In this document: positions 3-62,722 of the stretch, piece by piece
Layout of the letters: every line of letters begins with the position of its first letter
Numbering within the stretch: position 1 is the stretch's first letter
IMG/VR virus record: IMGVR_UViG_3300032116_000001
Coordinates: 62,001-126,000 of that record
Strand: one strand, 5' to 3'
Length of the DNA stretch: 64,000 nucleotides
Made by a program: the position numbers and the translations under genes
Notes under the pieces: model-generated
What the model saw: the letters and a program-made list of their open reading frames with translations, nothing else
Databases searched by the model: none
What the model was told of the DNA's origin: nothing

Positions 3-512
3 TTGGAGCGCCTTTTGGCTAGCAATTTGTGCATCAAATGCGCTAAGTGTTTTGATACCAAATTCGAGTGATTGTTTGCTTGATTTCAGATGTTGTTCAA
101 GCGCGGCTCTTGTTTCTGATACGTTCTTGCCTTTTCTTGTGATCGCGTCGAATGCCCAGCCAAGATATCTTTTAATAAGTTCATTTTCTGGAGTAGTGGC
201 TTGTGCTGGTTGCTGTGCATTGGGATTTTGCATAAAGTTCTGCAAAGACTGAGGGGCTTGTACATTTGCTGGCAATGTGTATACGGGACTGGCTAGAGCA
301 GGAGTTTGAGGAATATTCACCGATCTTAAATCAACTGGTGCCAATGGATTGTAGGAATTTTGCTGTGGCATTTGTTGTGTAAACGGCATGGGGCTAAATT
401 GCGCCACTCTTTTCATAACATCCGTGACTACATCTGCTTCTTTGGTCATATTTTGATTATCGAGATCAGATGCGATCCCTGCCAGAGTTTCGAGAATATC
501 TTTGTTTTCCAT
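3..512 (-). CDS. Hypothetical Q/P-rich protein with N-terminal LxxIAxxLDxxxxxxEAD...KRVAQ tag (putative virion protein); runs off the left edge
   Basis: Not in the ORF track. ATG at 512 gives MENKDILETLAGIASDLDNQNMTKEADVVTDVMKRVAQF..., open to the window edge. SigH-like promoter at 543-567. Confidence 0.8.
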   Translation of the reverse strand, partial: MENKDILETLAGIASDLDNQNMTKEADVVTDVMKRVAQFSPMPFTQQMPQQNSYNPLAPVDLRSVNIPQTPALASPVYTLPANVQAPQSLQNFMQNPNAQQPAQATTPENELIKRYLGWAFDAITRKGKNVSETRAALEQHLKSSKQSLEFGIKTLSAFDAQIASQKALQ

Positions 513-548
513 TTTTATCACCGTGGAGAAGTTATTATATATTTTCTT

Positions 549-1859
549 TTATTGATTATGAATCCCTTCTTTATTTGGTCTTCCGATAGAATAATATTCA
601 TATCCGATTCGTTTCATTTCTTCTTCTTCGAACATATTTCTTCCGTCAAAAATCCGCGGATTTCTCATTTTCTGTTTAATTTCGCGCCATTTAATGTCTT
701 TGAATTCTTTCCATTCTGTAATGATCAGTATCGCGTCTGTGTTTTCGGCTAGTTCTTCGATAGTGTTAGTCCATTGCACATTCGTTAATATTTTTTCAGC
801 ATTATGTTTGGCCACGGGATCATATACTTTAACGATGGCTCCTTCCTTGACAAGTTTTTGAATAATTGGAATTGACCTAGCGTCTCTCATATCATCAGTA
901 TCGGGTTTAAATGCAACTCCGAGCACTCCGATAATTTTGTCATTGACTCCATTGAGATTCGTTTGAATTTTTTGGATAAATTCTTTAGGCATTTGTTCAT
1001 TAATTTCTTTAGTTGCTTTAAGCATTTTGAAATCATATCCGATTTGATCGGCGATATGGATAAGTGCGCTTGTATCTTTCCCGAAGCAGCTTCCACCCCA
1101 TCCTATTCCAGCCCCGAGGAATTTATCTCCGATTCTATGATCGAGTCCCATTCCTCTTGCCACTTCTTTTACATCGGCCCCGACTTGTTCGCATATTTGT
1201 GCAATGGCGTTGATAAAGCTAATTTTCGTGGCGAGGAATGCGTTTGATGCATATTTAATCATTTCGGCGCTAATTGTATCTGTGAGGAAAACTTGTGTTT
1301 GTAGTTCTTGATATGCTTCGATCAATTTCTCCGCGGTTTTCCAGTTATCTGTTCCGATCACGATTCTATCTCCATTCATAGCGTCATGGATTGCGCATCC
1401 TTCTCTAAGGAATTCTGGATTACTTACGACATCGAATGTTGTTGGAAATTTTTGATATTTTTGAATAATTTCTTTGACTCTATGTGCTGTTCCAGGGGGT
1501 ACTGTGGATTTATTCACCACGATGATATGTTCTCTCATGGACTCTCCGATTTCTTTCGCAACATTATCAATATATTGCAGATCGGGGCTGCCGTCTTCTT
1601 TTTCTGGAGTTCCCACGCACACAAAGACAATTTCGCCCCAGTTTGCGGCTTGTTCCACCGTGTTTCCGTAGAATATTTGTGCTTTAGCGTCTTCGATCAT
1701 ATCTTGGAGTTCTGGCTCATAGATAGGGCATTCTCCATTTTTGAGTTTTTTAATTTTTTCTGGATCACTATCTACGCACATAACATCGTGCCCGATGTTT
1801 GCCATGATTGCTGTTTGCACGAGTCCCACATATCCTGCTCCGATCACGCTAATTCTCAT
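549..1859 (-). CDS. ugd: UDP-glucose 6-dehydrogenase
   Basis: Rossmann GAGYVG, CVGTP, NKSTVPPGT, SNPEFLREG, catalytic GGSCFGKD, FKPDTDDMR. Confidence 0.95.
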   Translation of the reverse strand: MRISVIGAGYVGLVQTAIMANIGHDVMCVDSDPEKIKKLKNGECPIYEPELQDMIEDAKAQIFYGNTVEQAANWGEIVFVCVGTPEKEDGSPDLQYIDNVAKEIGESMREHIIVVNKSTVPPGTAHRVKEIIQKYQKFPTTFDVVSNPEFLREGCAIHDAMNGDRIVIGTDNWKTAEKLIEAYQELQTQVFLTDTISAEMIKYASNAFLATKISFINAIAQICEQVGADVKEVARGMGLDHRIGDKFLGAGIGWGGSCFGKDTSALIHIADQIGYDFKMLKATKEINEQMPKEFIQKIQTNLNGVNDKIIGVLGVAFKPDTDDMRDARSIPIIQKLVKEGAIVKVYDPVAKHNAEKILTNVQWTNTIEELAENTDAILIITEWKEFKDIKWREIKQKMRNPRIFDGRNMFEEEEMKRIGYEYYSIGRPNKEGIHNQ

Positions 1860-3832: not shown

Positions 3833-4486
3833 TTATTGATTTATTAAGTCTTTGTTAATCCAGTTTTGATATATTTCTGGATACTTGTTGTCTCGAAATT
3901 CTTGTATACTATCATAATATTGATTTTTCTTATCATGGTAGATAATTATTGGTTCTTTTTCGCACGCCATAAGAAACCAATTGAGGATTAGTCTTCCAGT
4001 TCTTCCGTTGCCGTCCAGGAATGGATGTATGACTTCAAAGAGGTGGTGTGTATTCCACGCGGCTTCCACGGGGTCGATTTGATTATCTTGCGCTTGTTTA
4101 AGCCACGTTTGTGACATTGGCACCCAGAGTTCTCTCATGAGCGACGGCACTAAATAATGTTCGGGCGCGAATTTCCCATTAATTTTTACATTATGATTTC
4201 TATATGTCCCTCTTGCATTATTGAGTTCAAAAAAATCGACATTTTTCCCAAGTGTGGCATGTAGTGATCGTGGGATAATTTCTGTCACAACTTTGTTTTG
4301 TGTTTTGGCCAGTTCCATGGCTATTTCAAATGCATCTTTTTGATTGTCATAGAGTAATTCTCCTGGTTTGCTGCCAGGAATAAAATCTCCAAAGTAGCCA
4401 TATTGTGGGTCAATTTTATTGCTTTCTATTACGAAAGCATCAATATCAAATTTGTTCATTATAATTATATTACGTTTTATTTGCAT
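3833..4486 (-). CDS. Fic/Doc family protein (putative AMPylase)
   Basis: Intact Fic motif HPFLDGNGRTGR; ESNKI and GTYR elements. Confidence 0.9.
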   Translation of the reverse strand: MQIKRNIIIMNKFDIDAFVIESNKIDPQYGYFGDFIPGSKPGELLYDNQKDAFEIAMELAKTQNKVVTEIIPRSLHATLGKNVDFFELNNARGTYRNHNVKINGKFAPEHYLVPSLMRELWVPMSQTWLKQAQDNQIDPVEAAWNTHHLFEVIHPFLDGNGRTGRLILNWFLMACEKEPIIIYHDKKNQYYDSIQEFRDNKYPEIYQNWINKDLINQ

Positions 4487-4495: not shown

Positions 4496-5080
4496 TCATT
4501 TCTGTTTGAAATTGTACTTTTTGATATTATTTTCCGTAATGTTAAAGATAATTATGGGTTTGATTTTTAGCATTGCGTCTTTGATTGCGTTTGCGGTCCC
4601 TCCCTTTTGTGTCCCCGACCACACTGCGATCACTGCGTCTGATTTTTCAATCATCCATTTATTTCTTTTATCCAGCCAGTTCACGGCCTCATAATATTGC
4701 CATTGTGGTGCATTTTCATTTAATTCAATGATTTCTTTTGCTTTAAATTTTTCATATTGTTTTTTATCTGGTTTATAGGCATGTATTTCATCTGCTTTTT
4801 GCACAATGTTATTCCAGTCATTTTTTTCTTTATTAGGGAATTGTTTAGTTTGTCCTGGGAACGGTATTGCTACGATCAGTTGAATATCGGGGAATTCTTG
4901 TTTCAATTCGATTACAATTTGCGCAGCGTACATATCAACTCCCATTGCCATCCCGCTAATGAATCGTCTATAATTCTTTTGATATGCTGCTCGAATTAAT
5001 TTTTCAAGTGTTTTTTTAACTAGTTCTTCTTTACCTTGCAGTTCTTTTGGTCTATGTCCAGTGAAGCAAATAGTTTTCAT
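4496..5080 (-). CDS. SLOG/YspA (DUF1273) family protein
   Basis: CFTGHRP, FISGMAMGVD, RNKWMIEKSD.VIAVW, GGTAN motifs. Confidence 0.85.
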   Translation of the reverse strand: MKTICFTGHRPKELQGKEELVKKTLEKLIRAAYQKNYRRFISGMAMGVDMYAAQIVIELKQEFPDIQLIVAIPFPGQTKQFPNKEKNDWNNIVQKADEIHAYKPDKKQYEKFKAKEIIELNENAPQWQYYEAVNWLDKRNKWMIEKSDAVIAVWSGTQKGGTANAIKDAMLKIKPIIIFNITENNIKKYNFKQK

Positions 5081-5657: not shown

Positions 5658-6176
5658 CTATTCTTTAAGGATTGGATAAAATTCTTTTTCAGACACGATG
5701 CCGACAAAGCTTGATGTCATATCAACGGGAACATCCCATAGTTTCCCTTTTGCCGCTTGTTCTTTTGTGACATCAAGATATTCGCTAACTGATTCAATAA
5801 ATTCATCATCAAGTTTCCACATAATGGGTTTTAGGCCCATGTGGTCAAGTATTTGAAGCGTATACCAAAGCATTTGAATATTTGGGTCACTAGATTTAAA
5901 GTCGGCAGAAAAAACTTCTATTTCAGATGATGCAGCAGCGATCATAATTTCTTTGTTTTCTTTGGTCATCTTTTTAATTTCTGCCTCACGCTTAAGGGCT
6001 TGAGATTTATTTGCTGCTTTTTCTTTCCATACTAGTTCGACTGGTCTTCTAGATTTGGTATACGCTGCCCCTTTTTTGCTTTGGTTATGTTCTTCGGTCC
6101 TTTTTTGCGGGTCTATTGCGATACCGCAATACAAGGAGTTATCTGCGCACCTAACTATATAAACCCACCATTCCAT
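5658..6176 (-). CDS. GIY-YIG nuclease (YhbQ/UPF0213-like) with C-terminal extension
   Basis: WVYIVRCADNSLYCGI...R..EHN..KGAAYTKSRRPVELV...ALKREAEIKK. Confidence 0.9.
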   Translation of the reverse strand: MEWWVYIVRCADNSLYCGIAIDPQKRTEEHNQSKKGAAYTKSRRPVELVWKEKAANKSQALKREAEIKKMTKENKEIMIAAASSEIEVFSADFKSSDPNIQMLWYTLQILDHMGLKPIMWKLDDEFIESVSEYLDVTKEQAAKGKLWDVPVDMTSSFVGIVSEKEFYPILKE

Positions 6177-14993: not shown

Positions 14994-15389
14994 TTAAAGA
15001 TCGGGTCCGATGCTCACTTGGAAATCGCCCAATTGTTGTGTTATTGTATTGTTATTATTGTTTGTTTCAGATAAATTCTGTTGTGCTTGTTGTTGCTCAA
15101 GTACATATTGCCCTTGATCCATGTTATTGTCGCCATCGTTGTTAATTTGTTGACTTGGCACCTGATCGCCCATTGATTCCTCAATCTGCTTTAGCCTTTC
15201 GTTTAGTTGATTGACGCTAAACATAAGAGTTTGAACTTGTTTTTGCAATGGATTCGCCATGAGTTGCGCCAATTTTACGTTTAATTGGTCGGCCTGATCG
15301 GCAAAATTGGGATATCCAAGGTGATCAAACCGTTTTGCTATTTTTACTAAATCACGATTAATCCGAATAAAGTTTCTCATTGTTTTCAT
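14994..15389 (-). CDS. Q/N-rich protein with N-terminal LVKIAKRFDHLG...AD...KLAQ tag
   Basis: ORF track; tag matches those of 3..512 and 58465..58926. Confidence 0.7.
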   Translation of the reverse strand: MKTMRNFIRINRDLVKIAKRFDHLGYPNFADQADQLNVKLAQLMANPLQKQVQTLMFSVNQLNERLKQIEESMGDQVPSQQINNDGDNNMDQGQYVLEQQQAQQNLSETNNNNNTITQQLGDFQVSIGPDL

Positions 15390-42353: not shown

Positions 42354-44099
42354 TCAAATTGTTTTTACCGCAGCAATTGAAGATGCGACTCTAATTGATT
42401 GATCAATAAAGTCGGCTGATTTAAAGTCACCATTTTCCTCAAAAAACACTGCAAGGCGATTCATATCATCGAGAACTTTTGCAATGCGTATGCAAATATT
42501 TTCCGAGGAGCTAACAGTTTGCATACCTTCGTCTTTTTGTTTTGTGAAGTATGGATAAGACGCATTTTCTCGAACAACAAGGCTTTTGTCTGATTTTCCA
42601 GATTTCCAATTTTGAAGCTCAATGTCCATGATTTTTTTTCTTTCTTCTTCTGGGGCATTGTTGTGCAAAAATCCAAATGTGTTATCATCGCGCCTTAAAG
42701 ACATTAATGTTCCATTATTGTATCCTAAATTATTATAGGCGTTGTCACGTATTTTTTGTGCTTCCTCATCGCTGATTTTGTCCCAGGGCTTGTCTCCAAA
42801 TTGTTCTTTTTTTATTTGGTTGTACTGAAAGTGCCGCAACAATTCATCCACACCAAAAAGCACACTTCTCCATTCTTTCGTATCGAGTCGAGATGCCCTG
42901 GCAATAATTTGATCACGTGTTGTTGCTTTGATTCCAGCTTCATCAAGTTTGTTTTTAAGCGTTATTAAGAAATCTTGCTGAAGCATGTTAATATTAACAA
43001 GTTTCTTTGTGCCTGCTTCTTTATTGCTTCGGCCCGCAACATCTGCGTGCAGTTTAGCCTCAAGCATTGACTCGTACATTATCTCCATTATTTTTCTTGC
43101 AGTTTGGGGGTCTGTAATTTCATATGCGCGTCTGAAAATAATATGCAACGGTAAGCGACCGTTTTGCTCGACCTGATATTGCTTCAGCTTATAAATGGGC
43201 AAGAAAGCGTTTTCGGCTACCCATTGCCCTGATCCTTGAAAATATCTTGCTCGATTATTAGCCTTTGTAACAACTTCATCTATGTCAGCGGTGTCTCGGC
43301 TGATTAATTGGCCCTTTCTTCTGCGCATAAGGCTTGCTGGTACTGGACCCAAAGATTTTTGTCCAGATTGCTGGGCCAAATCTGGATTATTGGGTTTTTG
43401 TTTGCTTTCAATTTGATTCCTTAAATTAATATCTTCTTCCCATTGTTTGAGATTTTCTAATTCTTCAAATTGAGATCGATTCATATTGGGATTAGATTCA
43501 ATTTCTTTAATCTTGAACTGAATCGTTCTTAAAAGAGCCACATAATCCACATATTGATCTTGCGCCATATAGTCAATATGTGGGGGCATTTTGGTATTTT
43601 CATCTGAAACAAACTTTGGGTGCGGGTTGACTAGTTCGTCATAAGATAAATGATTGTCGAGCGCATCTTTCGGAGCTAAGTTTTTTTGTTTGTATTGAAA
43701 TACGGCTGATTTAGCTGATAGTTTAGCTCTGTTTAAAAGCCAGTTGTAAGGAGATGACACTCCTGATTCGTTGCGTATATCATAAGTTTCCAGGCTAGAC
43801 TCAATGCCTCTTTTCCACATATAATACATGACCTTTGATGACAAATCTTCGGCAGAATGTTTCTCTATTTCAGGATGCACCGTATTAATATATTTTAACG
43901 CCGTCTCTTCAAGAAGTTGCAAAAAACCTGGCAAATTCTTGATTTTTTGCAAAATTTCTCCTGACCGAGGGCTTTCTGTTTTGTAGCGAAAAACCAGATC
44001 ATTTAATGCTGACTTCAGGGATGATTCCTGGGCATTTTTGATAAATTTTAAAAAATTCACCGCATATTTTGGAAGCGCCTGGCGCATTGTATAATGCAT
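42354..44099 (-). CDS. Large protein with sigma region-2-like segment and C-terminal tag; apparent paralog of 60356..62722
   Basis: AEDLSSKVMYYMW...YNWLLNRAK; KPWDKISDEE block shared with the 60356 protein; C-terminal LAVFFEENGDFKSADFID. Confidence 0.55.
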   Translation of the reverse strand: MHYTMRQALPKYAVNFLKFIKNAQESSLKSALNDLVFRYKTESPRSGEILQKIKNLPGFLQLLEETALKYINTVHPEIEKHSAEDLSSKVMYYMWKRGIESSLETYDIRNESGVSSPYNWLLNRAKLSAKSAVFQYKQKNLAPKDALDNHLSYDELVNPHPKFVSDENTKMPPHIDYMAQDQYVDYVALLRTIQFKIKEIESNPNMNRSQFEELENLKQWEEDINLRNQIESKQKPNNPDLAQQSGQKSLGPVPASLMRRRKGQLISRDTADIDEVVTKANNRARYFQGSGQWVAENAFLPIYKLKQYQVEQNGRLPLHIIFRRAYEITDPQTARKIMEIMYESMLEAKLHADVAGRSNKEAGTKKLVNINMLQQDFLITLKNKLDEAGIKATTRDQIIARASRLDTKEWRSVLFGVDELLRHFQYNQIKKEQFGDKPWDKISDEEAQKIRDNAYNNLGYNNGTLMSLRRDDNTFGFLHNNAPEEERKKIMDIELQNWKSGKSDKSLVVRENASYPYFTKQKDEGMQTVSSSENICIRIAKVLDDMNRLAVFFEENGDFKSADFIDQSIRVASSIAAVKTI

Positions 44100-44213
44100 A
44101 TGTGTATATTTGCAATTTAAATTAATTAGCACCTTTTTGCAAATTTTGCTTTTGATCACAAGTGCATTTTTGGCATTTTTTCACTATAAAATCAATGGGA
44201 GAAAACAAAACAT

Positions 44214-47409: not shown

Positions 47410-48102
47410 TTGGGACAAGACCTATATATATTACAACTAGTTAGAAGGGCCAAAACTGGAGATGAGCGAGCTTTTTCTAGGCTCCTGGATGAAATAGAGC
47501 CAGACCTTAAAAAGGTCGCTCATCAATATTTTATTCAAGGACAAGACAAAGAAGATGTTCTTCAAGAACTAAGAATTGCAGTCTATAAGGCCGTGGGTTC
47601 CTATGATGAATCCCAAAACACTACGTTTAAAAGCTTTTGCATCAATCTTGTGTGTAAAAGGCATATATCCACGGCAATACATTCTGCACTAAGACACAAA
47701 AACAAAACTCTCAACAATGCAGTATCTCTTGATGCTCCAGTGATAATGGGTGATGATGGAAATATGCAATCTCTATCCGAGTTCATTCCTGACAGAGACA
47801 ATCCTTTGGAAGAAGACCTTGGTGATCGAAATATATTAGACGATTTGATATCCAGAGAGGAGCTTGAGGACAACCGCAAGCTTCTTGCGCCAAGGCTTAC
47901 ATCATTAGAGGGCAGGATTTTTGAGCAATATGGCCACAGCTCTTCGTATAAGGATATTGCAGAGGCATTGGGAATAGAACCCAAATGTGTTGACAATGCT
48001 CTTATGAGGATACGCAAAAAAGCCAGTGAAGTTTTTGACCAAACAGACCCAGGCAGCAATGTCAAAGATAGCGGCCCCAAAAAAAGAAGAAAACGAATTT
48101 AA
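47410..48102 (+). CDS. sigH: RNA polymerase sigma factor, SigH (Spo0H)-like
   Basis: YFIQGQDKEDVLQE...FKSF...KR.I.TAI..A.R.K.K.LN..VSLD...SYKDIAE...KCVDNALMRIRKK; TTG start with SD GAGGAG. Confidence 0.85.
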   Translation: MGQDLYILQLVRRAKTGDERAFSRLLDEIEPDLKKVAHQYFIQGQDKEDVLQELRIAVYKAVGSYDESQNTTFKSFCINLVCKRHISTAIHSALRHKNKTLNNAVSLDAPVIMGDDGNMQSLSEFIPDRDNPLEEDLGDRNILDDLISREELEDNRKLLAPRLTSLEGRIFEQYGHSSSYKDIAEALGIEPKCVDNALMRIRKKASEVFDQTDPGSNVKDSGPKKRRKRI

Positions 48103-50469: not shown

Positions 50470-50529
50470 GTTCAAATCTTAGATTTGAAGAATTATATTG
50501 AGGAATTAATAAGTTTCGGAGGTAGTTTT

Positions 50530-51120
50530 GTGGAAGCCCATTATCAATATATTAATGATTTAGTAACAAAATCACAAAATGGGGACACAAATGCTTTGTC
50601 AGATATTGCAGAATTTTATAGCCCGCTCATATCTGCATCTATCCAAAGATGTATTCTTAGAGAACCCAGGCTTTTGAGATTCAAAGAAGATGTTGAAGCA
50701 GAAGTTTTTTTAATCCTTAAAAAGCTTGTAGAGAATTACGATCCCAATTTGTCTTATTTTTCTTATTATATATCCACTCGTTTAGATTATGCAATTATCA
50801 ATCAGTGTAGGCAAACAATCCTGGGCCTTAAATCTAATTCTCGATTCTGTGAGGAAGTTTCTTTTTCTGATATATCAGAAGATTTAGATATTGTCAACCA
50901 TGATGATCCTTTTGGTAAAATTCATGTTGCGCAGGCAATTCAAGGGGCGATTGATAAATTGAATCCTCGACAAAAAGAAGCAATAGAAGCTTACTTTTTT
51001 GACAACTTAACTCAGCAAGAAGCCGCGAAAAAACTTGGCATTACACAAGCTTCGTTTTGTAAAAGGCTTCAGCGAGGCCTGAACAGCATGAGAGAATTAT
51101 TATCCGAAGATTTTATTTAA
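50530..51120 (+). CDS. Sigma-70 family factor (regions 2 and 4)
   Basis: YSPLI, EDVEAE, YDPNLSYFSYYI, LNPRQKEAI...LTQQEAAKKLGITQ; GTG start with SD GGAGGT. Confidence 0.85.
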   Translation: MEAHYQYINDLVTKSQNGDTNALSDIAEFYSPLISASIQRCILREPRLLRFKEDVEAEVFLILKKLVENYDPNLSYFSYYISTRLDYAIINQCRQTILGLKSNSRFCEEVSFSDISEDLDIVNHDDPFGKIHVAQAIQGAIDKLNPRQKEAIEAYFFDNLTQQEAAKKLGITQASFCKRLQRGLNSMRELLSEDFI

Positions 51121-55800: not shown

Positions 55801-56121
55801 AATCAAGAATACAAAGGAAAAATTTATTCTGAATTAATGCAATTAATCAGAGAACAAAGAATAGATATTTATGGAATTTCTGGTGGCACCTATCAAGATG
55901 CCAAGGGCGTGGTTCAAGACCTTAACGAAATTGCTGAGGCTAAAATTCAATTTACATTTTTGCAAAAAGTTTGGAAAGGCAAAAGATTTGAGATCAAAGC
56001 ACTGTCTGGATACAAAGACGACATATGTGATGCTGTTGCGGCAGCGGCATATGAATGTTTGACGGCAAGGGTGCTAAGCAGTTTTCCAAAATCGAGAGTG
56101 GCCAGAACTGGCGCTAGATAA
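52897..56121 (+). CDS. terL: Terminase large subunit, intein-containing
   Basis: YPWQ, Walker A GRRSGK|S, IMDEVA, LSNP, QFGAEF, HLDPA, SFDQW, KDDICDAVA. Confidence 0.9.
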   Translation: MKKGRPSKPEYLKQDKKTSLMQQLAALEDSFKNQGYEGEYDDEIMPSVRAEVMPPPTPEKTNYNPDQIVDIVTFMEHPYFCNLKPYPWQRLILKCFYMGQEGNTNLEIQDVDQDVRESGTCDGCVWKYVRNDEEKVYKGRKDGKQLRNIFSVVNSPCLTCERFDDTLREDRYVAARHEATNPDDSRKIDNLIKRPISDNYETEYDLLHASEFDPLLRKQVLDKCTNRYKFQELILVLGRRSGKALALDTPVLTTKGWKTMGTLQVGDYVFGDDGFPTRIIAATEPMEGRICYRMRFSNGDTIVADEQHQWRVVSKRERKNQPRARIPRELRQEIKTTKEIAQTLLHGRSRTIVDCKTGKSRIMGAERNWSVELASPLQMPEADLPIAPYLMGAWLGDGCSTHGHITSNTIEVIDRIRETTSYNPWKQACNPFGYCIGKDANEVSFKERLRDLGLLGKGRKHIPTAYLLASEHQRLELLRGLVDTDGHVCARSGRIEITTVYDDLARGIHSLVCSLGQKATILTGDATLNGKFVSKKYRICFTPRNGLLPATLSYKRDRVSHAKKSDVGRIFIEKVEKLAESVPVRCIQVDNASNMFLAGKSLVPTHNSFLVSVMALYELYRLLAMGHPQARYGLMEFDEIVLLNVARNEEQAKKAIFSKIKQTVLASPFFQPYVGKDTELEMRFFTDHDKKENERRAENGINLFSGSLVLRCGSSNASGLVGLTCWSIIMDEVAAMAGDNPDSGLDYALYDDLKPSGATFGKDFKMMMLSNPKGPIGLLYDLHENRQDDPTTLVMRLATWLTNPSIDQEWLEEQKRKDPTEFQMQFGAEFGAASSDPMFTVDQVNGMWAMTSTTPRAEHGQPLIEYYAHLDPARTSDYYALVVSHAEQIYPIQIGPDNKPLKRVVIDHIHFWNPRTKNQPVSEKEVEDYLIELHQKFKFKQVSFDQWHSQSSIIRLKSMGINAVERQFNQEYKGKIYSELMQLIREQRIDIYGISGGTYQDAKGVVQDLNEIAEAKIQFTFLQKVWKGKRFEIKALSGYKDDICDAVAAAAYECLTARVLSSFPKSRVARTGAR
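53626..54717 (+). mobile_element. Class 3 intein (364 aa) with LAGLIDADG homing endonuclease, in the TerL P-loop
   Basis: Starts ALALDTPV (Ala1); block B ADEQHQW; LAGLIDADG motifs GAWLGDG and LRGLVDTDG; block F VRCIQV; ends PTHN|S. Confidence 0.92.
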
Positions 56122-56206: not shown

Positions 56207-57301
56207 ATGTCAACAAACAAGTCTAGTCAAGGCCCAATGGAACGCCAATCACAATATGGTGGGGTTGGCGGAGGGCAATCTCCTTTTGCGCCTGGGGGCT
56301 CGCCGATGGGCAGAGGCTACGGGTCTGGTGGTGGCTTAGATATAAATAAATACGTGGTGGACGAAAGTTTCGACGCGGTTCTTGAGCAAGTACACAATCC
56401 TGCGCCGATTGACCCCGAAAGAAATATTGAAAAAAGACTTGAAGAACAACATGTTTTTGCCGAGGAAAATGCAATACCTTATGATCTTAGTTTTGAAGAG
56501 CGACAAAGATTAAAAATTAGGAATGAAATTAGAAGAAGAGAACAATTTTACGAAGATGCGGCAAAAAGCATTGCCAAAAACTCCCCATCTTACATCCAAA
56601 ATAATTTCCAGCCTAGTGAATCTCATATTACACCCTTTAATGTCCTGTTGCAATCGAGACGAAAAAACAATGACGAATCATACGTAAGAGACCCAAGAGA
56701 GGATGATATCCCGCCCCAAATTAAACCAACAAGATATCATCCTGTTTTGTCCAGTAATGGCCATGATCGATTGGCTTATTTAATAAGCAGGCCAAATGAA
56801 ATTAATGACGAAGATTCAGATGAAGTAAACTGGGCCAACAAAGCGCGTGTGACATTTCCGCTTGGACTTGGGAGCACCCCCGTTTTAAATTTAGGTTCAG
56901 AACTTGATGAATATTTAGATCAAGTTTCAAAACAAAATTGGGGCGGGCAAAAAAGCACGTCAAACGAGCCGTCTGTTGGATTTGACTTTCATGAGCCAGA
57001 TGAATTCACATTATTGCACGAACCAGACACAAAAAACCTGCCATCAAGCATTGGTGAACTGGCTGAAGATGTAGTTAATGGCATGGGAAGACTTGATAAA
57101 GAAAATGATTATGGAATTGTTGACAGCCCATTTGTTACACTTGAGGCAAAGTTAGAAGCCACAAATCGCGCCGAGCCAGAGAGAAGCCCCAGCGACGTAT
57201 TTCCAGGCAATAAGTGGCAACTACACAAAGATGAGCCCGCAGGCATATTGGATAGCTATCAGCAAAAATTTGAGGGCCAGGGCTCTCCTTGGAAAATTTA
57301 A
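56207..57301 (+). CDS. Hypothetical late protein (Gly-rich N-terminus, low complexity)
   Basis: 364 aa; AGGA-N18-GAAT promoter and GGGAG SD upstream. Confidence 0.7.
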   Translation: MSTNKSSQGPMERQSQYGGVGGGQSPFAPGGSPMGRGYGSGGGLDINKYVVDESFDAVLEQVHNPAPIDPERNIEKRLEEQHVFAEENAIPYDLSFEERQRLKIRNEIRRREQFYEDAAKSIAKNSPSYIQNNFQPSESHITPFNVLLQSRRKNNDESYVRDPREDDIPPQIKPTRYHPVLSSNGHDRLAYLISRPNEINDEDSDEVNWANKARVTFPLGLGSTPVLNLGSELDEYLDQVSKQNWGGQKSTSNEPSVGFDFHEPDEFTLLHEPDTKNLPSSIGELAEDVVNGMGRLDKENDYGIVDSPFVTLEAKLEATNRAEPERSPSDVFPGNKWQLHKDEPAGILDSYQQKFEGQGSPWKI

Positions 57302-57323
57302 AAACGCCTGTATAAACATAATC

Positions 57324-58436
57324 ATGTACGATTATCTAATCGTCGGTGCGGGATTGTATGGAGCTGTTTTTGCTCGTGAAGCGACTGATCGTGGAAAACG
57401 AGTTTTAGTAATAGACAAGCGTAAGCATATTGGTGGGAATTGTCACACTGAAATTATAGACAGCATTCCTGTGCATCAATATGGACCTCATTGTTTCCAT
57501 ACTTCCCAGGATTATATCTGGAATTATGTTCGAAAATTTGCCGATTTTAATCATTTTAGTCTTAGAACACGCGCAAATTTTAAGGGCAAATTATATTCAC
57601 TTCCAATAAATCTGTCTACGATGCATCAGGTTTGGCCCGAAGTTGTAACCCCGAGTCAGGCTGCCGCTAAATTGGCGGCGGAAACCGCGCCGTACATCGG
57701 GATTAATCCATCAAATCTTGAAGAACATGCGTTAAGTCAGGTTGGGCCAACTTTATATGAAATGTTTATCAAGGGATACACTACTAAACAATGGGGCAGA
57801 GACCCAAGAGAGCTTCCCTCTTCGATTATAAAAAGACTTCCCGTCAGGCTGACAATGAATGATAGATACTTTCATGATTCTCATAGATATGAGGGAATTC
57901 CAATTGGGGGTTACACGGCTATGATTTCAAATATGTTTAAAGGCATAGATGTTAGACTTGGGGTGGATTACCTAATTAACAGAGAGGAATTAAAAAAAGT
58001 AAGCAAAAAGATTGTTTACACTGGGGCCATAGACGCTATGTATGATTTTTGCTATGGAAAACTAGAGTATAGATCATTGCAATTTGAACATGAAATGCTT
58101 GATGGGGATTTTCAAGGCAACGCTATTGTAAATTACACAGAAGATACTGTTCCCTATACCAGAATCGTTGAGCATAAGCACTTTGAGTTTTTAAATCTTC
58201 CACACACTATAATTACTAAAGAATTTCCATCGGCACTAAATCAAAGTTTGGAACCTTTTTATCCAGTAAATGACAGCGCAAATAACGCACTGTTTGACAA
58301 ATATCGTGAGCGTGCTGAGTTCGAAAAAAATCTCATACTTGGGGGGCGATTGGCAAATTATAGATATTATGATATGGATGCCACTGTCGCAAATGCTCTT
58401 TCTGCAATCAGAAAAGAATTTTGTTGCGCAGGATGA
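57324..58436 (+). CDS. glf: UDP-galactopyranose mutase
   Basis: VGAGLYG, HIGGN, YGPHCFHT, GYTTKQWG, YRSL, YTRIVEHKHF, GRLANYRYYDMD. Confidence 0.95.
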   Translation: MYDYLIVGAGLYGAVFAREATDRGKRVLVIDKRKHIGGNCHTEIIDSIPVHQYGPHCFHTSQDYIWNYVRKFADFNHFSLRTRANFKGKLYSLPINLSTMHQVWPEVVTPSQAAAKLAAETAPYIGINPSNLEEHALSQVGPTLYEMFIKGYTTKQWGRDPRELPSSIIKRLPVRLTMNDRYFHDSHRYEGIPIGGYTAMISNMFKGIDVRLGVDYLINREELKKVSKKIVYTGAIDAMYDFCYGKLEYRSLQFEHEMLDGDFQGNAIVNYTEDTVPYTRIVEHKHFEFLNLPHTIITKEFPSALNQSLEPFYPVNDSANNALFDKYRERAEFEKNLILGGRLANYRYYDMDATVANALSAIRKEFCCAG

Positions 58437-58464: not shown

Positions 58465-58926
58465 ATGAACAAAGTTGCAGCAATTCAATCATTGATCGAA
58501 ATGGCAAATCACCTAGATGATACTGGAATGATTCTGGAAGCGAATAATTTAACAGATATAGCCAAACGTATTGCGCAATATGTTCCAAAGACATGGGACA
58601 TCGACCCGAACCGTCACTATGAAAATTTTGTTGTTCCTTTTAAGTCACTGGAAGATGAGTTTAAGGAAAACGATGACTTAAGACAAAAGCAGCCCAGATA
58701 TCGAGCCCCTGATTACAGAAACCTGGTTGGTGATGAGGATGAAAACATAGAGGGATTATTACATGGTCCCGATTCGGTTCCTGGCCCTGCATATGTTGAT
58801 CCAGGTAGTATAGCATCTAATCCTGGTATGGCAATGGGTGACCTAAGCGATTTCACATGGGAAAACTCTTATGAAGCCAATAATGATTCTACCAATAGAT
58901 GGAAAAATCTTATTCCCAATCGATAG
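58465..58926 (+). CDS. Hypothetical protein with N-terminal LIEMANHLDDTG...EAN...KRIAQ tag
   Basis: ORF track; best copy of the shared tag. Confidence 0.75.
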   Translation: MNKVAAIQSLIEMANHLDDTGMILEANNLTDIAKRIAQYVPKTWDIDPNRHYENFVVPFKSLEDEFKENDDLRQKQPRYRAPDYRNLVGDEDENIEGLLHGPDSVPGPAYVDPGSIASNPGMAMGDLSDFTWENSYEANNDSTNRWKNLIPNR

Positions 58927-59013: not shown

Positions 59014-59538
59014 ATGCCCTATCCCATTAAACCCGTTCATAAACTTGATCTTCATGAAGAAATTTTTGATTCTCCCAGCATTGAGGCAGATTTAGCATCG
59101 ATATCTGCATTGCAAATGCAGTTTTTTGGTAATTCTGGGGTCCGAGAAGCCAAAGTAAAGTTATCTGACAGAATGATTGAAATGCTAAGGGCTATTGAAC
59201 AATCTCAGGATGAAATTGTTACCGCAGCCCAATCATTAACAACTTTGAATAAAACTGGTGATGCAATTTACAGAGTCCCAATGTCAATCACTGATCATGA
59301 TTTACTTGGGCTGAAAACAGCTGAACTGGTGCGGGGCCATGGCCGTGCCGTGACTCTTACAGAAAAGGGGCGCATTGCCTTGCGCGATCATTATCTAAAT
59401 CAGCCTGTTAATGAATTTAGAAAGGCTAGAACCAAGCCTAAATTTGATCTAAATGCTGCTCAAGCTATAACGGCGTCAAACGAAAGTGCCCGAGTTGCTA
59501 CTGCTTCTAAGTTTAGACGCAGCAATGATGTAGAATAA
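59014..59538 (+). CDS. Winged-helix-like protein
   Basis: LxGLKTAELV....VTLTEKGR wing motif; AGGA-N18-GAAA promoter. Confidence 0.55.
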   Translation: MPYPIKPVHKLDLHEEIFDSPSIEADLASISALQMQFFGNSGVREAKVKLSDRMIEMLRAIEQSQDEIVTAAQSLTTLNKTGDAIYRVPMSITDHDLLGLKTAELVRGHGRAVTLTEKGRIALRDHYLNQPVNEFRKARTKPKFDLNAAQAITASNESARVATASKFRRSNDVE

Positions 59539-59544
59539 ATAATT

Positions 59545-60333
59545 ATGGAACGCTTTAGTATCGCAAAAAACGCCGAGGCTTTGGCTGATAAGATGCACGA
59601 ACTTGCTGTATGGAGCAAGACGCATCCCAATTCGTCAAAGTTTAAACGCGGTATATTCAAGCTGCCGCCAGTATTTTCAAGCGACAAACATGGTGATCCG
59701 AGAAAAAATTTAATTGCCATGATAAAGACGCTAGCAGATTACGAAGAGTCAGATGCTGCGCCAAAGCTTGCTGAGCTTCCGTCTAGATATAATCAGTATG
59801 GCGGCGGACCAGAATTAAACGAAAAAGATTTGCGCAAAATTCACAACTGGCTTCAGCAAGTTGGTTTTGGTATTAGGGCAGCAATGTTGATTAATGAGAT
59901 GGAAAATCCAACAGAAAGTATGTCTCACTTAGATGTACCAGAAAGAGTTTTTCATATGTTATTTGCGAATCACCCAAGGCGAACATTTGTTACATATGCT
60001 TCGGACAACAAATATGAGCTTAGGCCATTAAGATATGCAGACTCTAAAGCAAAATTAAGATGGCTGAAAGAAGAATTTGCTCAACTAAATAATAAAAGAG
60101 TAATTACTGCAGGCGGATTTGGAGTTAGGCCAACTCAGCAAGAATGGGATACATTTGGGCTGAGGGGACAGACAAAAACTGCTTTAGCATCAGTTAATTC
60201 GCAAATAGATAATTTAGTAGGCCAGGCTAAAGCATTAGATTTTGAAGGAAAATTTACAGAAGCTGATATTTTAGATTTTAAATTAAATCAGTTGAGTAAA
60301 AATTTAGAAGGCTTTGATCAAGTCCAAATTTAA
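59545..60333 (+). CDS. Hypothetical protein with C-terminal tag (LVGQAKALDFEGKFTEADILD)
   Basis: ORF track; motif match. Confidence 0.7.
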   Translation: MERFSIAKNAEALADKMHELAVWSKTHPNSSKFKRGIFKLPPVFSSDKHGDPRKNLIAMIKTLADYEESDAAPKLAELPSRYNQYGGGPELNEKDLRKIHNWLQQVGFGIRAAMLINEMENPTESMSHLDVPERVFHMLFANHPRRTFVTYASDNKYELRPLRYADSKAKLRWLKEEFAQLNNKRVITAGGFGVRPTQQEWDTFGLRGQTKTALASVNSQIDNLVGQAKALDFEGKFTEADILDFKLNQLSKNLEGFDQVQI

Positions 60334-60355
60334 CATTCAAAAAGGAAAACAATCC

Positions 60356-62722
60356 ATGAAATTTCAACGTAATTATTGTCCCTCGATAAGTCAAATTCTC
60401 TCAGATGAAAGCCTAAAGCGATTATCGGCTATAACAGCATATTTAAATTTGTATTCTACAGGAGACAATACAAGTAATGCTAATTTTCGCCTAAGTTCAA
60501 GCTTGGAGTCAATGAAGAGAATTATAATCTCGTCTGAAATTGAAACATTACATCGCAAGACTGTTAAAGAGGATATTGATCGCATTAAGCATGCCTTGAA
60601 AAAAGCTTACTCTTTGGGTAAAGAATCATATGAAGCCTATGTTGACGCAAATAGTTCTGAAATTATAGCAGCGTTCTGGGCATGGATGATGACCCAAAAG
60701 CAATCTTTGTTTACAGGCATTAGTAATCAAAATAAATCTCTTTTAAGGAATTATCATGTCGGGCAAAGCGAGATCGATGACATGATCGAAGCGGCCATAC
60801 ACGAATTTATCACTCGGACAGAAGGAAAAACTAATCTTCTTGCGTCTGTTAAAAACTGGTCGCCTAGCGGAGGCGCAGATTTACATACATGGGTTCTTAA
60901 TGGTGCTAAAAACATGTTGGATATCACTGTCACCAAGCAAAGGCACCAAATCGTTAATCGCGGCAAATCTCTGGACGAAAATCTTAAAGGAAAAGACGGC
61001 GATGGAGACTCGCTTGGTGATATGATTGTTGATCCAAAATCCTCAACAGATGCAAAAGAATCTTATGATATTACAAACTATGACGAATTAGTTGAAGCTT
61101 TTGTGGAGGCCTTGCCTGAAAAAATTAGCGAACAGCCAGATTATATACGTGGGTTAATTGATAGAGGATTTAGGGCCATGAAGGTTCAGGCACAAAATGC
61201 AGAAGACCCCGAAAGTGAAAATAATTTTTACGAAATGTCCTTAAAGACTGCTAATGAGCTTTTTCAAAATGTTATGAATAGCTTTGAAGAGCTTAAGCGC
61301 TCTGTAAAAGTGATGATTTCAGACAAAACTGATGAAAATAGAGAAATTGCCATGAAGGCAAGAGAAGCTTATGACAGGCGTGTTTATTCACTGTTGAGAA
61401 ATTTGGTTGAGTCCTTTAATCCAAGTATAGCAAATAAAAAGAAAACTCAAAGAAATTTAAGCAATGTGGATGAGAATAACAAGGAAAACGAAAACAATTT
61501 CATTGACAATGAAGACAAGCAAGTTAACCAAGCCCCAAAAATTCGTTCCAGAGACTTGATTAAACCCGAAGATGAAGTCGGCAAAGAGACGGCGACTCCA
61601 GAAGAACTTATGGTAAGAAAAATGAAGCTGGACGAATTCAGAAAACAGCTTTTGCCATATTATTATCAAGTCGGTTCATTCCCAAAAACCAAATATAGAG
61701 ATGGTAAAATAACGCCATATGCCCTTAGTGAATATGGAATTGGATTAATTAGACCATACACACACTTTTTTTCAGGCATAGATTCGCCCGAAGACATAAA
61801 AGCTATGTTTGGCACTGACGAGGACAAAATAAATTCCCTGTCTCCCACAGCTTTATTTTCTCGGTTGCTAATTGAGAGTGGCTTAAAGGCTCATGAGGAC
61901 TACACCCTTGAAAACAAATTTAAAGTTCCAGGGTCAACAATGGGCAAAAACGAAGTTCAAAGATTTAGGGATTATTTCATTGACCAAATTGACACCAATC
62001 CAATGTTTACAAGACACAAAGATGTGCTTTTGCAAATGCTAGAAAGTTTCTTTTTAAACAAAAACAACAAACCATCTGATGAAAAAGTAAAAGAAATGAT
62101 CGAAAACCTTGATGCTCATACACGAATGGCCTCTTATGAGTGGGCTAGACATCAGTTAATGGGCGGTGATGGTGAACCGAAAGCATGGGCAGATTTAAGC
62201 CCTGATGAACTCAAGGCCATTGCTGTGAAGGCCTGGGAATCTTTATACGCTGATGGTTTTAGACTTTTTAGAATTCAAGAAATTAATGAACGTGGCGAGC
62301 CACATAGAAAAGGCCCTGTTATGCCATTGAGCAGATGGGTTAAGCCCGATGTCTTTTTGCCAATTATGGAAGAGGAAGTAAACAATATACAACGCATGCA
62401 GGCCAACAAAGCGGCAGTTAAAAAGGGTTATAGCCCCATTGCACAACGAAGCCGACTTGACCCCAGTATTAATCTTCAGAATATTGGTCAAAAAAGGCGT
62501 GAGATTTTGGACATTGCTAGAAATAATCAGGAAGTTCAGCAAAGCGATGTGCCTAAAACCTTTATCGAAGACAACTCTGTTGAGGATTCTAAAGATGCGT
62601 TGCAGTCACATGCAAGTGTGCTAGATAGAATGCTTCTCAAAATTAGTTCCATGGAGCAATCTGGTGATTACAAAAATGCAGACATTGAAATGTCAAGGCT
62701 AGAATCTATTTTAAGAGGATAA
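60356..62722 (+). CDS. Large protein with sigma region 2/3-like segment and C-terminal tag
   Basis: DDMIEAA...LHTWVLNGAKNMLD...KSLDENL...GDSLGDMIVD; C-terminal MEQSGDYKNAD. Confidence 0.6.
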   Translation: MKFQRNYCPSISQILSDESLKRLSAITAYLNLYSTGDNTSNANFRLSSSLESMKRIIISSEIETLHRKTVKEDIDRIKHALKKAYSLGKESYEAYVDANSSEIIAAFWAWMMTQKQSLFTGISNQNKSLLRNYHVGQSEIDDMIEAAIHEFITRTEGKTNLLASVKNWSPSGGADLHTWVLNGAKNMLDITVTKQRHQIVNRGKSLDENLKGKDGDGDSLGDMIVDPKSSTDAKESYDITNYDELVEAFVEALPEKISEQPDYIRGLIDRGFRAMKVQAQNAEDPESENNFYEMSLKTANELFQNVMNSFEELKRSVKVMISDKTDENREIAMKAREAYDRRVYSLLRNLVESFNPSIANKKKTQRNLSNVDENNKENENNFIDNEDKQVNQAPKIRSRDLIKPEDEVGKETATPEELMVRKMKLDEFRKQLLPYYYQVGSFPKTKYRDGKITPYALSEYGIGLIRPYTHFFSGIDSPEDIKAMFGTDEDKINSLSPTALFSRLLIESGLKAHEDYTLENKFKVPGSTMGKNEVQRFRDYFIDQIDTNPMFTRHKDVLLQMLESFFLNKNNKPSDEKVKEMIENLDAHTRMASYEWARHQLMGGDGEPKAWADLSPDELKAIAVKAWESLYADGFRLFRIQEINERGEPHRKGPVMPLSRWVKPDVFLPIMEEEVNNIQRMQANKAAVKKGYSPIAQRSRLDPSINLQNIGQKRREILDIARNNQEVQQSDVPKTFIEDNSVEDSKDALQSHASVLDRMLLKISSMEQSGDYKNADIEMSRLESILRG

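What the first reader, a model, noticed from the sequence alone, without database searches (positions are those of the whole stretch)
396..62722. A shared ~28-aa terminal tag on six proteins: candidate virion-targeting/processing signal
Seen: the same helical-hairpin motif sits at an extreme terminus of six proteins. N-terminal copies: LAGIASDLDNQNMTKEADVVTDVMKRVAQ (3..512), LIEMANHLDDTGMILEANNLTDIAKRIAQ (58465), LVKIAKRFDHLGYPNFADQADQLNVKLAQ (15389). C-terminal copies: LVGQAKALDFEGKFTEADILD (59545), MNRLAVFFEENGDFKSADFIDQSIRVAS (42354), and a weaker MLLKISSMEQSGDYKNADIE (60356). Consensus L-x3-A-x2-[LF][DE]-x2-G-x4-A[DN]-x2-[DT]. All three N-terminal copies end in [KR]-x-A-Q. None of the recognisable replication or metabolic enzymes has it, and carriers lie behind the AGG-N19-GAAW-type promoter or in its operons. 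Known: T4 internal proteins use an N-terminal capsid-targeting sequence removed by the prohead protease. Inference: a modular tag that loads diverse cargo into the head for later ejection, with cleavage after K/R-x-A.
Basis: partly seen in the sequence, partly recalled or inferred. Interest (0 to 1): 0.85.

Follow-up and report, generated by a model that had tools for sequence, protein, structure and literature searches.

The report
Portable helical-hairpin tag on phage proteins
A roughly 30-residue two-helix module, resembling a single TPR repeat, is attached by floppy linkers to at least twelve unrelated proteins of this uncultured 379-kb phage and to many proteins of other uncultured phages. 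It looks like a docking tag, and gene neighbourhoods hint, without proving, that it delivers its carriers to the assembling phage head.

Summary
All six copies are at the stated coordinates. A profile built only from sequences of other phages ranks four of the six as the top four of 624 window ORFs, and the completed profile later found new carriers it had never seen. The module is a solitary TPR-like helix-turn-helix with no Pfam family. This phage has at least 12 carriers, and a pattern scan of viral contigs gave 58 distinct copies.

- C5 and C6 are paralogues, so their tags are not independent acquisitions. Both are giant proteins with a sigma-70 region 2/3.0-like segment.
- C3 is not statistically supported.
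- In other phages the module can be internal or repeated.
- The literal AGG-N19-GAAW pattern is not enriched.
- The K/R-x-A-Q ending looks like the end of helix B, not a demonstrated cleavage site.

The virion-loading idea is only partly supported. In its favour:
- Carriers cluster in head-morphogenesis neighbourhoods (terminase to portal, and upstream of a protease-domain giant protein).
- Carriers include an ART-PolyVal ADP-ribosyltransferase, a LysM cell-wall hydrolase and the sigma-like proteins.

There is no direct evidence of packaging or cleavage. Docking to the transcription machinery, and tag-to-tag association, remain live alternatives.

The parts
3..512 (-). C1 carrier, cut by the window edge (full length 173 aa). 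The N-terminal tag is at 399-485, followed by a P/Q-rich linker and a short helical C-terminal domain.
   Evidence: Exact string match. Full gene in L003:11348-11869. Leave-family-out score 17.4 bits.
14994..15389 (-). C3, a candidate carrier of 131 aa. The putative N-terminal tag is at 15264-15350. This is the weakest member.
   Evidence: String present. Leave-out score only 0.8 bits. No divergent homologues. No Pfam family reaches its curated cut-off.
42354..44159 (-). C5 carrier, about 580 aa, with a probable ATG start near 44099. The C-terminal tag is at 42378-42464. It is a shorter paralogue of C6.
   Evidence: hhalign against the C6 family gives 97.4% probability and E 1.2e-11 over residues 427-590, tag included. 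The N-terminal part aligns collinearly but weakly with the sigma-like region. Scores 11.6 bits with the external C6-family tag profile.
58465..58926 (+). C2 carrier, 153 aa. The N-terminal tag is at 58492-58578. The rest is acidic and mostly disordered-looking, with conserved short motifs such as PGPAYVDP.
   Evidence: Orthologues in L007, L013, L018, L040, L059, L069, L072 and L074 keep the tag. Leave-out score 10.4 bits.
59014..59538 (+). An untagged 174-aa protein always found between C2 and C4. Its C-terminal half reads like a winged helix (my reading of the sequence).
   Evidence: Conserved position in L007, L013, L040, L059, L069, L071 and L072. No Pfam or PHROG hit.
59545..60333 (+). 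C4 carrier, 262 aa. The C-terminal tag is at 60214-60300.
   Evidence: C4-like tags in relatives score 13-28 bits with a profile built only from C6-family tags. Leave-out score 8.7 bits.
60356..62722 (+). C6 carrier, 788 aa from the ATG at 60356. It has a sigma-70 region 2/3.0-like segment at about 60758-61051, a long helical body, a disordered linker, and the C-terminal tag at 62630-62716.
   Evidence: Orthologues and remote homologues all end in the hairpin. AlphaFold2 gives helices 743-769 and 772-787 after a low-confidence linker at 688-746. The domain profile matches sigma factors in PDB in 26 of 29 hits, best E 5.8e-4.
62728..63222 (+). An untagged DUF192 protein that always follows the C6 gene. 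It marks the end of the conserved C2-C4-C6 block.
   Evidence: Pfam PF02643, E 7e-22. Conserved synteny.

Best explanation
**What it is.** The motif is a small autonomous domain. It is one TPR-like helix-turn-helix with consensus L-[VIL]-[KR]-x-A-x-x-[LYF]-D-x-x-G-x-[YF]-x-E-A-D-x-[ILV]-[DT]-x-x-[LI]-x-[KR]-[ILM]-[AS]. It has been copied onto the N- or C-terminus of many unrelated phage proteins and is tethered to them by flexible linkers. In other phages it also occurs inside proteins.

**How it most likely works.** It acts as a docking tag that brings all its carriers to one shared partner. The most likely destination is the interior of the assembling head. The carriers would then be co-packaged and probably ejected with the DNA. 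Those carriers are two giant sigma-70-like proteins, an ART-PolyVal ADP-ribosyltransferase, several small disordered proteins, and in other phages a LysM cell-wall hydrolase.

**Shown.**
- The module exists, its copies are homologous, and it is portable and tethered.
- It is associated with head-gene neighbourhoods.

**Inferred.**
- That it binds a common partner.
- That the partner is a head or prohead component.

**Not supported.** Proteolytic removal at K/R-x-A.
For: **Homology across families and ends.**
- A C6-family-only tag profile detects C5, C1 and C2 in the window.
- It also detects C4-like and C2-like tags in relatives.
- Carriers C9 and C10 were found out of sample.
- Leave-family-out scores are 8.7-19.2 bits for seven carriers.

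**Conservation down to 16-22% protein identity.** Remote C6 homologues all end in the hairpin.

**Tethering.** In the AlphaFold2 model the C6 hairpin has pLDDT about 75 and follows a linker of about 50 residues with pLDDT below 50.

**Modular gain.** Only the closest ~7 of 80 ART-PolyVal homologues carry the tag, after a conserved junction.

**Spread.** 58 distinct copies at 15 bits or more were found in IMG/VR contigs of 7-479 kb, often in runs of three to five (about seven in L060 at a 12-bit cut-off) consecutive genes.

**Head context.**
- The block terminase, p364, C2, 174-aa protein, C4, C6, DUF192 lies upstream of the portal; the block itself recurs in L040, L069 and L074.
- C8 lies in the block just downstream of the major capsid gene.
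- Carrier clusters lie directly upstream of the protease-domain giant gene in L032, L060 and L062.
- A three-tag protein lies two genes after the portal in L043.
- No tags were found on tail proteins or in the early-promoter region.

**Cargo logic.** ARTs of polyvalent proteins and T4 Alt are packaged or injected effectors (PMC5512222). In Tunturi_5 the ART is fused into a structural-block polyvalent protein, and no tags are found there.
Against: - There is no virion proteomics, no structure of a complex and no expression data for any carrier. All relatives are metagenomic.
- C5, C1/C7 and C3 lie outside the structural block.
- C5 and C6 carry a sigma-like segment, and the conserved neighbour looks like a winged-helix protein. 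Both fit a transcription role at least as well.
- No tag was found on the proteins next to the capsid gene that would be scaffold candidates (612 aa and 208 aa).
- A standalone ArdC-N/MPTase-PolyVal effector has no tag.
- Phage G and Tunturi_5, the nearest cultured relatives by portal or ART, lack the tag in the regions scanned. The idea therefore cannot be checked against existing proteomes.
- Only about 135 kb of the 379-kb genome was scanned systematically.
Confidence: 0.45

Rival explanations
1. **Transcription-hub docking.** The hairpin docks its carriers onto host RNA polymerase or a phage transcription complex. The sigma-like C5 and C6 would use it in place of a region-4 contact. The ART would be recruited to modify the polymerase. 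The small N-tagged proteins would be co-factors or competitors. This is analogous in logic to the shared clamp-binding tails of T4 gp33, gp55 and gp43.
For: - The C6 family has a sigma-70 region 2/3.0-like segment. 26 of 29 PDB profile hits are sigma factors, best E 5.8e-4.
- hhalign against the phage's own sigma factor gives E 9e-4.
- Atlas protein-language-model neighbours include sigma clusters.
- No region 4 was detected in C6.
- The conserved untagged neighbour reads like a winged helix.
- The phage encodes two canonical sigma factors beside its clamp and clamp loader.
- T4 ARTs target RNA polymerase (PMC5512222).
Against: - A LysM cell-wall hydrolase carrier has no obvious business on RNA polymerase.
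- Clusters of three to seven tagged genes sit inside head modules next to portal and protease-domain genes.
- The sigma assignment rests on weak profile scores. Foldseek found nothing significant and Pfam found nothing.
Confidence: 0.2
2. **Tag-to-tag association.** Solitary TPR-like hairpins from different proteins stack on each other as an intermolecular TPR array or helical bundle. Possibly N-type pairs with C-type. This would assemble the carriers into hetero-oligomers or a condensate-like core. It could be the physical basis of either head loading or another complex.
For: - A single TPR unit is not expected to be stable or functional alone.
- The tag profile matches consensus TPR proteins, MamA and Hop TPR1.
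- No multi-repeat receptor resembling the tag was found in about 135 kb.
- There are many carriers per genome.
- Both N- and C-terminal versions occur in the same operon, as with C2 alongside C4 and C6.
- Some proteins in other phages carry two or three spaced copies, which would allow cross-linking.
Against: - There is no structural test.
- N-type and C-type tags show no clean complementary signature.
- Two thirds of the genome was not scanned systematically, so a dedicated receptor could lie there.
Confidence: 0.15
3. **No shared function.** The hairpin is a generic, easily evolved amphipathic TPR-like capping element, or a chaperone handle. Some tag-bearing phages encode Hsp70 and DnaJ, and C7 has a J-domain-like stretch. 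On this view it is not a targeting device.
For: - It resembles generic TPR consensus sequences.
- C3 and the window's C5 and C6 copies are weak matches.
- Hsp70 and DnaJ genes lie near tagged genes in L027 and L028.
Against: - Cross-family profile detection is far above the shuffled controls.
- The bias towards protein ends is strong.
- The tag was gained on a subclade of an otherwise untagged enzyme family.
- It is conserved while the adjoining linker diverges.
- One TPR unit cannot form the three-repeat carboxylate clamp that binds Hsp70 tails (established knowledge of TPR co-chaperones).
Confidence: 0.08

Closest known systems
Tetratricopeptide repeat (TPR) motif
   Same: It is a helix-turn-helix of about 30-34 residues. 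It has the small-large-Gly-aromatic-Ala signature: tag positions A5, L8, G12, Y14 and A17 correspond to TPR positions 8, 11, 15, 17 and 20. Helix B ends in A...P. The tag profile hits consensus TPR proteins, MamA and Hop TPR1 in PDB.
   Different: It is solitary, not in tandem arrays of three or more. Where a protein has several copies they are about 200 residues apart. It is tethered at protein ends. No Pfam TPR model detects it.
Phage T4 capsid targeting sequence (CTS) of internal proteins and Alt
   Same: It would be a portable signal shared by otherwise unrelated proteins, including an ADP-ribosyltransferase, that end up in the head and are injected (PMC3012670, listed and otherwise from my own knowledge; PMC5512222).
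   Different: The T4 CTS is a short (~10 aa) N-terminal peptide removed by the gp21 protease at L/I-x-E (my knowledge of the T4 literature). This tag is a folded hairpin of about 30 aa found at N-termini, C-termini and internally. It shows no sequence similarity to the CTS, and neither cleavage nor packaging has been demonstrated.
C-terminal helix-turn-helix coat-binding domain of P22-type scaffolding proteins (used in engineering to load cargo into P22 capsids)
   Same: It is a two-helix hairpin at a protein end that could dock on the inner capsid surface. That would be the same mechanical idea as scaffold-fusion cargo loading.
   Different: The P22 domain is basic and sits only on the scaffolding protein (my knowledge). 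The tags here are on average slightly acidic, with mean net charge -1.4. They sit on many proteins, and the scaffold candidates next to the capsid gene lack them.
Encapsulin cargo-loading peptides
   Same: It is a terminal tag at either end, joined by a flexible linker, that could direct varied cargo into an HK97-fold shell.
   Different: Encapsulin peptides are short linear motifs (my knowledge). This tag is a folded hairpin, and its binding to the capsid protein is untested.
Polyvalent proteins of phages (MuF- or portal-linked multi-effector proteins)
   Same: They carry the same effector repertoire, ART-PolyVal. They have the same genomic setting next to portal and head genes. They have the same presumed purpose of delivering effectors with the DNA (PMC5512222; Tunturi_5 gp321).
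   Different: In polyvalent proteins the effectors are covalently fused into one giant protein. Here the ART is free-standing and carries the hairpin, which suggests non-covalent docking in place of fusion. That step is an inference.

Membership tests
TPR repeat superfamily | Helix-turn-helix with the conserved small/large residue pattern at TPR positions 8, 11, 15, 17, 20, 24 and 27. | tested here: met
   The column profile of 27 tags gives A5 24/27, L/Y/F8 25/27, G12 24/27, Y/F14 18/27 and A17 26/27. AlphaFold2 predicts two helices. The tag profile hits consensus TPR proteins in PDB, E 2.6e-5 summed over four repeats.
TPR repeat superfamily | Occurs as tandem arrays, usually three or more adjacent repeats forming a superhelix. 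| tested here: not met
   Every carrier in this phage has one copy. Multiple copies in other phages are spaced about 200 aa apart. No Pfam TPR repeat family (TPR_1 type) hits any carrier; one sub-threshold hit on C3 is to the unrelated nucleoprotein-TPR family.
T4-type capsid targeting sequence | A short N-terminal peptide, present only at the N-terminus of head-internal proteins. | tested here: not met
   The tags are about 30 aa long. In IMG/VR, 34 copies are N-terminal, 13 C-terminal and 11 internal.
T4-type capsid targeting sequence | Removed by the prohead protease at a defined site, with carriers present in virions. | not testable with these tools
   No proteomics exists for any tagged phage. 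The K/R-x-A-Q ending is conserved but reads as the end of helix B.
P22-type scaffold coat-binding helix-turn-helix | A basic C-terminal helix-turn-helix on the scaffolding protein that binds coat protein. | tested here: not met
   Mean tag charge is -1.4. The tag is present on many proteins and at N-termini. It is absent from the 612-aa and 208-aa proteins upstream of the capsid gene.
UVR domain (UvrB/UvrC hairpin) | The A-x2-L-x-F-E-x-A-A-x2-R-D spacing, and detection by the Pfam UVR model. | tested here: not met
   The loop is four residues longer here (read directly from the sequences). No UVR hit appears at E up to 1.
Sigma-70 family (for carriers C5 and C6) | Region 2 (core binding and -10 recognition) followed by the region 3.0 'SLD..iG....LGD.I.D' segment. 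| tested here: inconclusive
   The C6-family domain profile hits sigma factors in 26 of 29 PDB matches, best E 5.8e-4, in two collinear segments. hhalign against the phage sigma gives E 9e-4 and probability 23%. Pfam finds nothing. Foldseek is not significant.
Sigma-70 family (for carriers C5 and C6) | A region 4 helix-turn-helix (flap binding and -35 recognition). | tested here: not met
   No Sigma70_r4 hit in any of 12 family members. The two canonical phage sigma factors do hit it.
ART-PolyVal (PF18760), for carrier C8 outside the window | Pfam model match above the gathering threshold. | tested here: met
   70.3 bits against a cut-off of 31.2. All 80 homologues carry PF18760.

The most novel reading that the evidence does not exclude
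A widespread group of uncultured phages, from about 20 kb to about 480 kb, uses one recognisable folded hairpin as a natural cargo-loading tag. The set of proteins a phage packs into its head and injects could then be read directly from sequence. In this jumbo phage that set would include two giant sigma-70-like proteins and a free-standing ADP-ribosyltransferase. The phage would therefore arrive with its own promoter-specificity factors.
Probability: 0.3. Interest if true: 0.85.

Novelty: new variant of a known kind. Interest (0 to 1): 0.68.

Why it matters
Most genes of large phages have no assigned function, and proteins delivered with the DNA are especially hard to recognise. A portable, profile-detectable tag shared by dozens of otherwise orphan proteins gives a handle on a whole functional class.

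- If the tag means 'load into the head', it would allow sequence-based prediction of ejected proteins.
- It would point to injected sigma-like factors, which I know of no precedent for.
- It would offer a natural encapsidation tag for engineering.
- If instead it docks on RNA polymerase or on itself, it still defines an unnamed interaction module and a new family of giant sigma-like proteins.

Tried and rejected
- **Six-seed profile.** It is circular. The leave-one-out test on six seeds was weak, and N-only and C-only mini-profiles did not cross-detect. This was resolved only after collecting homologues from elsewhere.
- **Searches with C6 or the C6 alignment.** IMG/VR and metagenome scans found few relatives. 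The exhaustive profile search was what opened up the family.
- **Pfam and PHROGs.** They found nothing on any carrier except ART-PolyVal on C8.
- **Foldseek.** Neither the full C6 model nor its sigma-like domain gave a significant match. The sigma assignment rests on sequence profiles.
- **Atlas searches.** They gave sigma-like leads for C6, nothing for C4, and only unnamed viral clusters for the tag.
- **Phage G.** It is the closest cultured relative by portal. It has no tag in its first 40 kb, and its gp7 is not detectably related to C6.
- **Literal promoter pattern.** It is not enriched. A different and strong bipartite motif, AAAAATCCC..N..CGGATATATAA, marks an early-looking region left of the window, and it carries no tagged genes.
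- **The search for related loci with the tag alignment.** A degenerate DNA pattern worked instead.
- **Large proteins next to the carrier clusters in L060 and L076.** They are not portals.
- **Motif strings in the literature.** They are not found in any relevant paper.
- **UVR domain and EF-hand readings.** Rejected on spacing, judged by eye.

Full report
**Source and setting.** The window is part of IMGVR_UViG_3300032116_000001, a 378,848-bp uncultured phage contig. Window position 1 is about contig position 62,001. The same phage recurs in many freshwater metagenomes, once as a 421-kb contig. The window encodes:
- a DnaE-type polymerase;
- a beta clamp, a clamp loader, ribonucleotide reductase and a large terminase interrupted by a LAGLIDADG intein;
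- two canonical sigma-70 factors, IF3 and dUTPase.

Downstream of the window lie the portal, a 1426-aa protein with a maturation-protease-like N-domain, and the major capsid protein. The nearest cultured relative by portal is Bacillus phage G, at 30% identity.

- C6 has three orthologues at 40-44% identity. An exhaustive profile search of 1.84 billion proteins found further homologues at 16-22% identity. All of them end in the same hairpin, although the segment just before it is unconserved.
- A profile made only from those foreign C-terminal hairpins ranks C5, C1, C6 and C2 as the top four of 624 window ORFs, each at exactly the tag position.
- In relatives it hits C4-like C-terminal tags at 28, 17 and 13 bits and a C2-like N-terminal tag at 16 bits.
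- With all tags pooled, walking along the genome turned up carriers the profile had never seen. C9 scored 19.7 bits and C10 scored 18.1 bits. The best of 20 shuffles scored 7.3, and the best non-carrier ORF about 3.
- Leave-family-out scores are 8.7-19.2 bits for C1, C2, C4, C7, C8, C9 and C10.
- C3 is not supported. It scores 0.8 bits and has no divergent homologues.
- The window's own C5 and C6 copies are divergent. They are validated through their families.

**What the module is.** The consensus is L-[VIL]-[KR]-x-A-x-x-[LYF]-D-x-x-G-x-[YF]-x-E-A-D-x-[ILV]-[DT]-x-x-[LI]-x-[KR]-[ILM]-[AS].
- The AlphaFold2 model of C6 gives two helices, 743-769 and 772-787, at pLDDT about 75. They follow a linker of about 50 residues with pLDDT below 50.
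- The tag profile searched against PDB sequences returns consensus TPR proteins, MamA, Hop TPR1 and Mad3.
- The conserved positions map onto TPR positions 8, 11, 15, 17 and 20.
- It is therefore a solitary TPR-like hairpin.
- No Pfam family covers it, either in my scans or in the precomputed annotations of relatives.

**How many carriers, and what are they?** About 135 kb of this genome was scanned systematically, 121.5 kb of it as one contiguous stretch. Pattern hits elsewhere on the contig were added to that. Together they give at least twelve carriers.
- N-terminal tag: C7 (148 aa, next to C1), C1, C3 (doubtful), C2, C9, C10, and ORFs in L042 and L079.
- C-terminal tag: C4, C5, C6 and C8.

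C5 is a paralogue of the C-terminal third of C6, hairpin included (hhalign probability 97%, E 1.2e-11). Its N-terminal part aligns collinearly but weakly with C6.

The C6 family has a segment resembling sigma-70 region 2 plus the start of region 3, 'SLD.piG....LGDmI.D'.
- A profile of that segment returns sigma factors in 26 of 29 PDB hits, best E 5.8e-4, in two collinear pieces.
- hhalign against the phage's own sigma gives E 9e-4.
- Atlas protein-language-model neighbours include sigma clusters.
- Pfam and Foldseek do not confirm this, and no region 4 is seen.
- I rate 'sigma-like' as probable, not proven.

C8 lies in the block just downstream of the capsid gene, immediately after a ParB-like nuclease gene. 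It is an ART-PolyVal ADP-ribosyltransferase (70 bits against a cut-off of 31) with the hairpin near its C-terminus. Its tag region matches the C4-like tag of a distant relative at 52% identity over 48 residues. The small N-tagged proteins are low-complexity or acidic and have no known domains.

**Modularity.** Of 80 ART-PolyVal homologues, only the closest seven or so carry the hairpin, always after a conserved 'NNGLYDP.NP.ITA' junction. The rest end without it. In the cultured Tunturiibacter phage Tunturi_5, the homologous ART is one domain of a 1362-aa polyvalent protein. That protein combines SprT-like, 2H phosphoesterase, ART and GNAT domains and is encoded in the structural block. No hairpins are found in that 50 kb.

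**Spread.** A degenerate DNA pattern for A-x2-L-D-x2-G-x-[YF]-x-E-A-D was scanned against IMG/VR. It returned 50 stretches in contigs from 7 to 479 kb.
- The profile finds 58 distinct hairpins at 15 bits or more in them: 34 near an N-terminus, 13 near a C-terminus and 11 internal.
- They often occur in runs of consecutive genes, for example in L060, L076 and L075.
- Some proteins carry two or three copies about 200 residues apart, as in L043, L044 and L036.
- One carrier is N-tag plus LysM plus a cell-wall hydrolase.

**Where the genes sit.**
- C2, the untagged 174-aa protein, C4, C6 and DUF192 form a block between terminase and portal. The terminase-to-portal layout is seen in the relatives whose loci reach the portal, and the block itself recurs in further contigs.
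- In L032, L060 and L062 the carrier clusters lie directly upstream of the gene whose N-domain matches that of the 1426-aa protein. Homologues of that domain in cultured phages are annotated as capsid maturation protease or structural protein.
- In L043 a three-tag protein lies two genes after the portal.
- In L027 and L028 a tagged ART and a tagged 187-aa protein precede a tail-tube gene.
- No tags occur on the large tail proteins.
- No tags occur in the region left of the window, which is full of small genes behind a strong AAAAATCCC...CGGATATATAA motif.
- C5, C1/C7 and C3 lie outside the structural block.

**Mechanism.**
- Firmly supported: a portable, tethered interaction domain. The same folded unit appears at either end of unrelated proteins behind flexible linkers. 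That is how docking or targeting modules look.
- Most likely, at about 0.45: the partner is part of the assembling head, so that carriers are packaged and ejected. The grounds are the gene neighbourhoods, the cargo types, and the contrast between fusion in Tunturi_5 and a tag here. The cargo types are an ART as in T4 Alt and polyvalent proteins (PMC5512222), a cell-wall hydrolase, and polymerase-directed proteins.
- Rivals: docking on the transcription machinery (about 0.2), mutual stacking of solitary TPR units (about 0.15, and compatible with either destination), and no common function (about 0.08).
- The proposed cleavage after K/R-x-A has no support. Many copies, N- and C-terminal alike, end helix B in [KR]-x-A/S. 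The ending resembles the A...P end of a TPR helix B. It would not remove a C-terminal tag.

**What was not possible.** There was no multimer modelling and no proteome or expression data. Two thirds of the genome was not scanned systematically.

Noticed in passing
window 60356-62722 and 42354-44159: C6 and C5 form a previously unnamed family of giant proteins (about 580-850 aa). They have a sigma-70 region 2/3.0-like segment, no detectable region 4, and an invariant MKFxR N-terminus in the C6 orthologues. Only 13 relatives were found among 1.84 billion representative proteins.
   Followed up: partly
window 52897-56121: The large terminase is 1074 aa, against 711-713 aa in relatives. It carries a LAGLIDADG/Hom_end insert around residues 474-542, so it probably contains an intein.
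   Followed up: partly
L001:18166-20628 (just right of the window): The portal protein has a C-terminal HNH/DUF559-type endonuclease extension at residues ~692-807. The extension is also present in relatives.
   Followed up: no
left of the window (L003, L026; about 3.5-19 kb upstream of window position 1): A strong bipartite upstream motif, AAAAATCCC(C)T followed about 14 nt later by AATCGGATATATAA, precedes at least 14 small genes on both strands. It looks like the early promoter class of this phage. None of the tagged genes has it.
   Followed up: partly
window 47410-48102, 48195-49361, 50485-51120, 46247-47335: Two canonical sigma-70-family genes flank the beta-clamp gene, and the clamp loader is next door. 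The clamp, 377/382-aa protein, sigma order is conserved in a relative. This arrangement invites a T4-like link between the clamp and late transcription.
   Followed up: no
window 45548-46123: A phage-encoded translation initiation factor IF3, with both Pfam domains.
   Followed up: no
window 549-1859 and 57231-58436; L024:14723-17297: Sugar-nucleotide genes (UDP-glucose dehydrogenase, UDP-galactopyranose mutase) and, by eye, likely glycosyltransferases. One of the sugar genes is embedded in the terminase-to-portal block, which hints at glycosylation of virion or host components.
   Followed up: no
L003:11869-12315 (carrier C7, just left of the window): After its hairpin, C7 repeats the 'DVMKRLAQ' ending. 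It then has a stretch resembling helices I-II of a J-domain (FYVLGISPNATPEEAEEAYFKMI) but lacks the HPD motif.
   Followed up: no
window 59014-59538: The untagged 174-aa protein always found between C2 and C4 has a C-terminal segment, LLGLKTAELVRGHGRAVTLTEKGRIALR, that reads like a winged-helix DNA-binding motif.
   Followed up: no
L024:11305-12483 (right of the window): An ORF that by eye resembles a TnpB-type (IS200/IS605-like) transposon protein sits among the genes downstream of the capsid block.
   Followed up: no
window 3833-4486, 4496-5080, 5658-6176; L026:12374-13249: Standalone Fic, YpsA and GIY-YIG proteins lie inside the window. An ArdC-N/MPTase-PolyVal protein lies left of it. That polyvalent-type effector has an early-type promoter and no hairpin.
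   Followed up: no
L027 and L028 (other jumbo phages with tagged ART): These phages encode Hsp70, DnaJ, a trypsin-like protease and a subtilisin-like protease close to the tagged genes.
   Followed up: no
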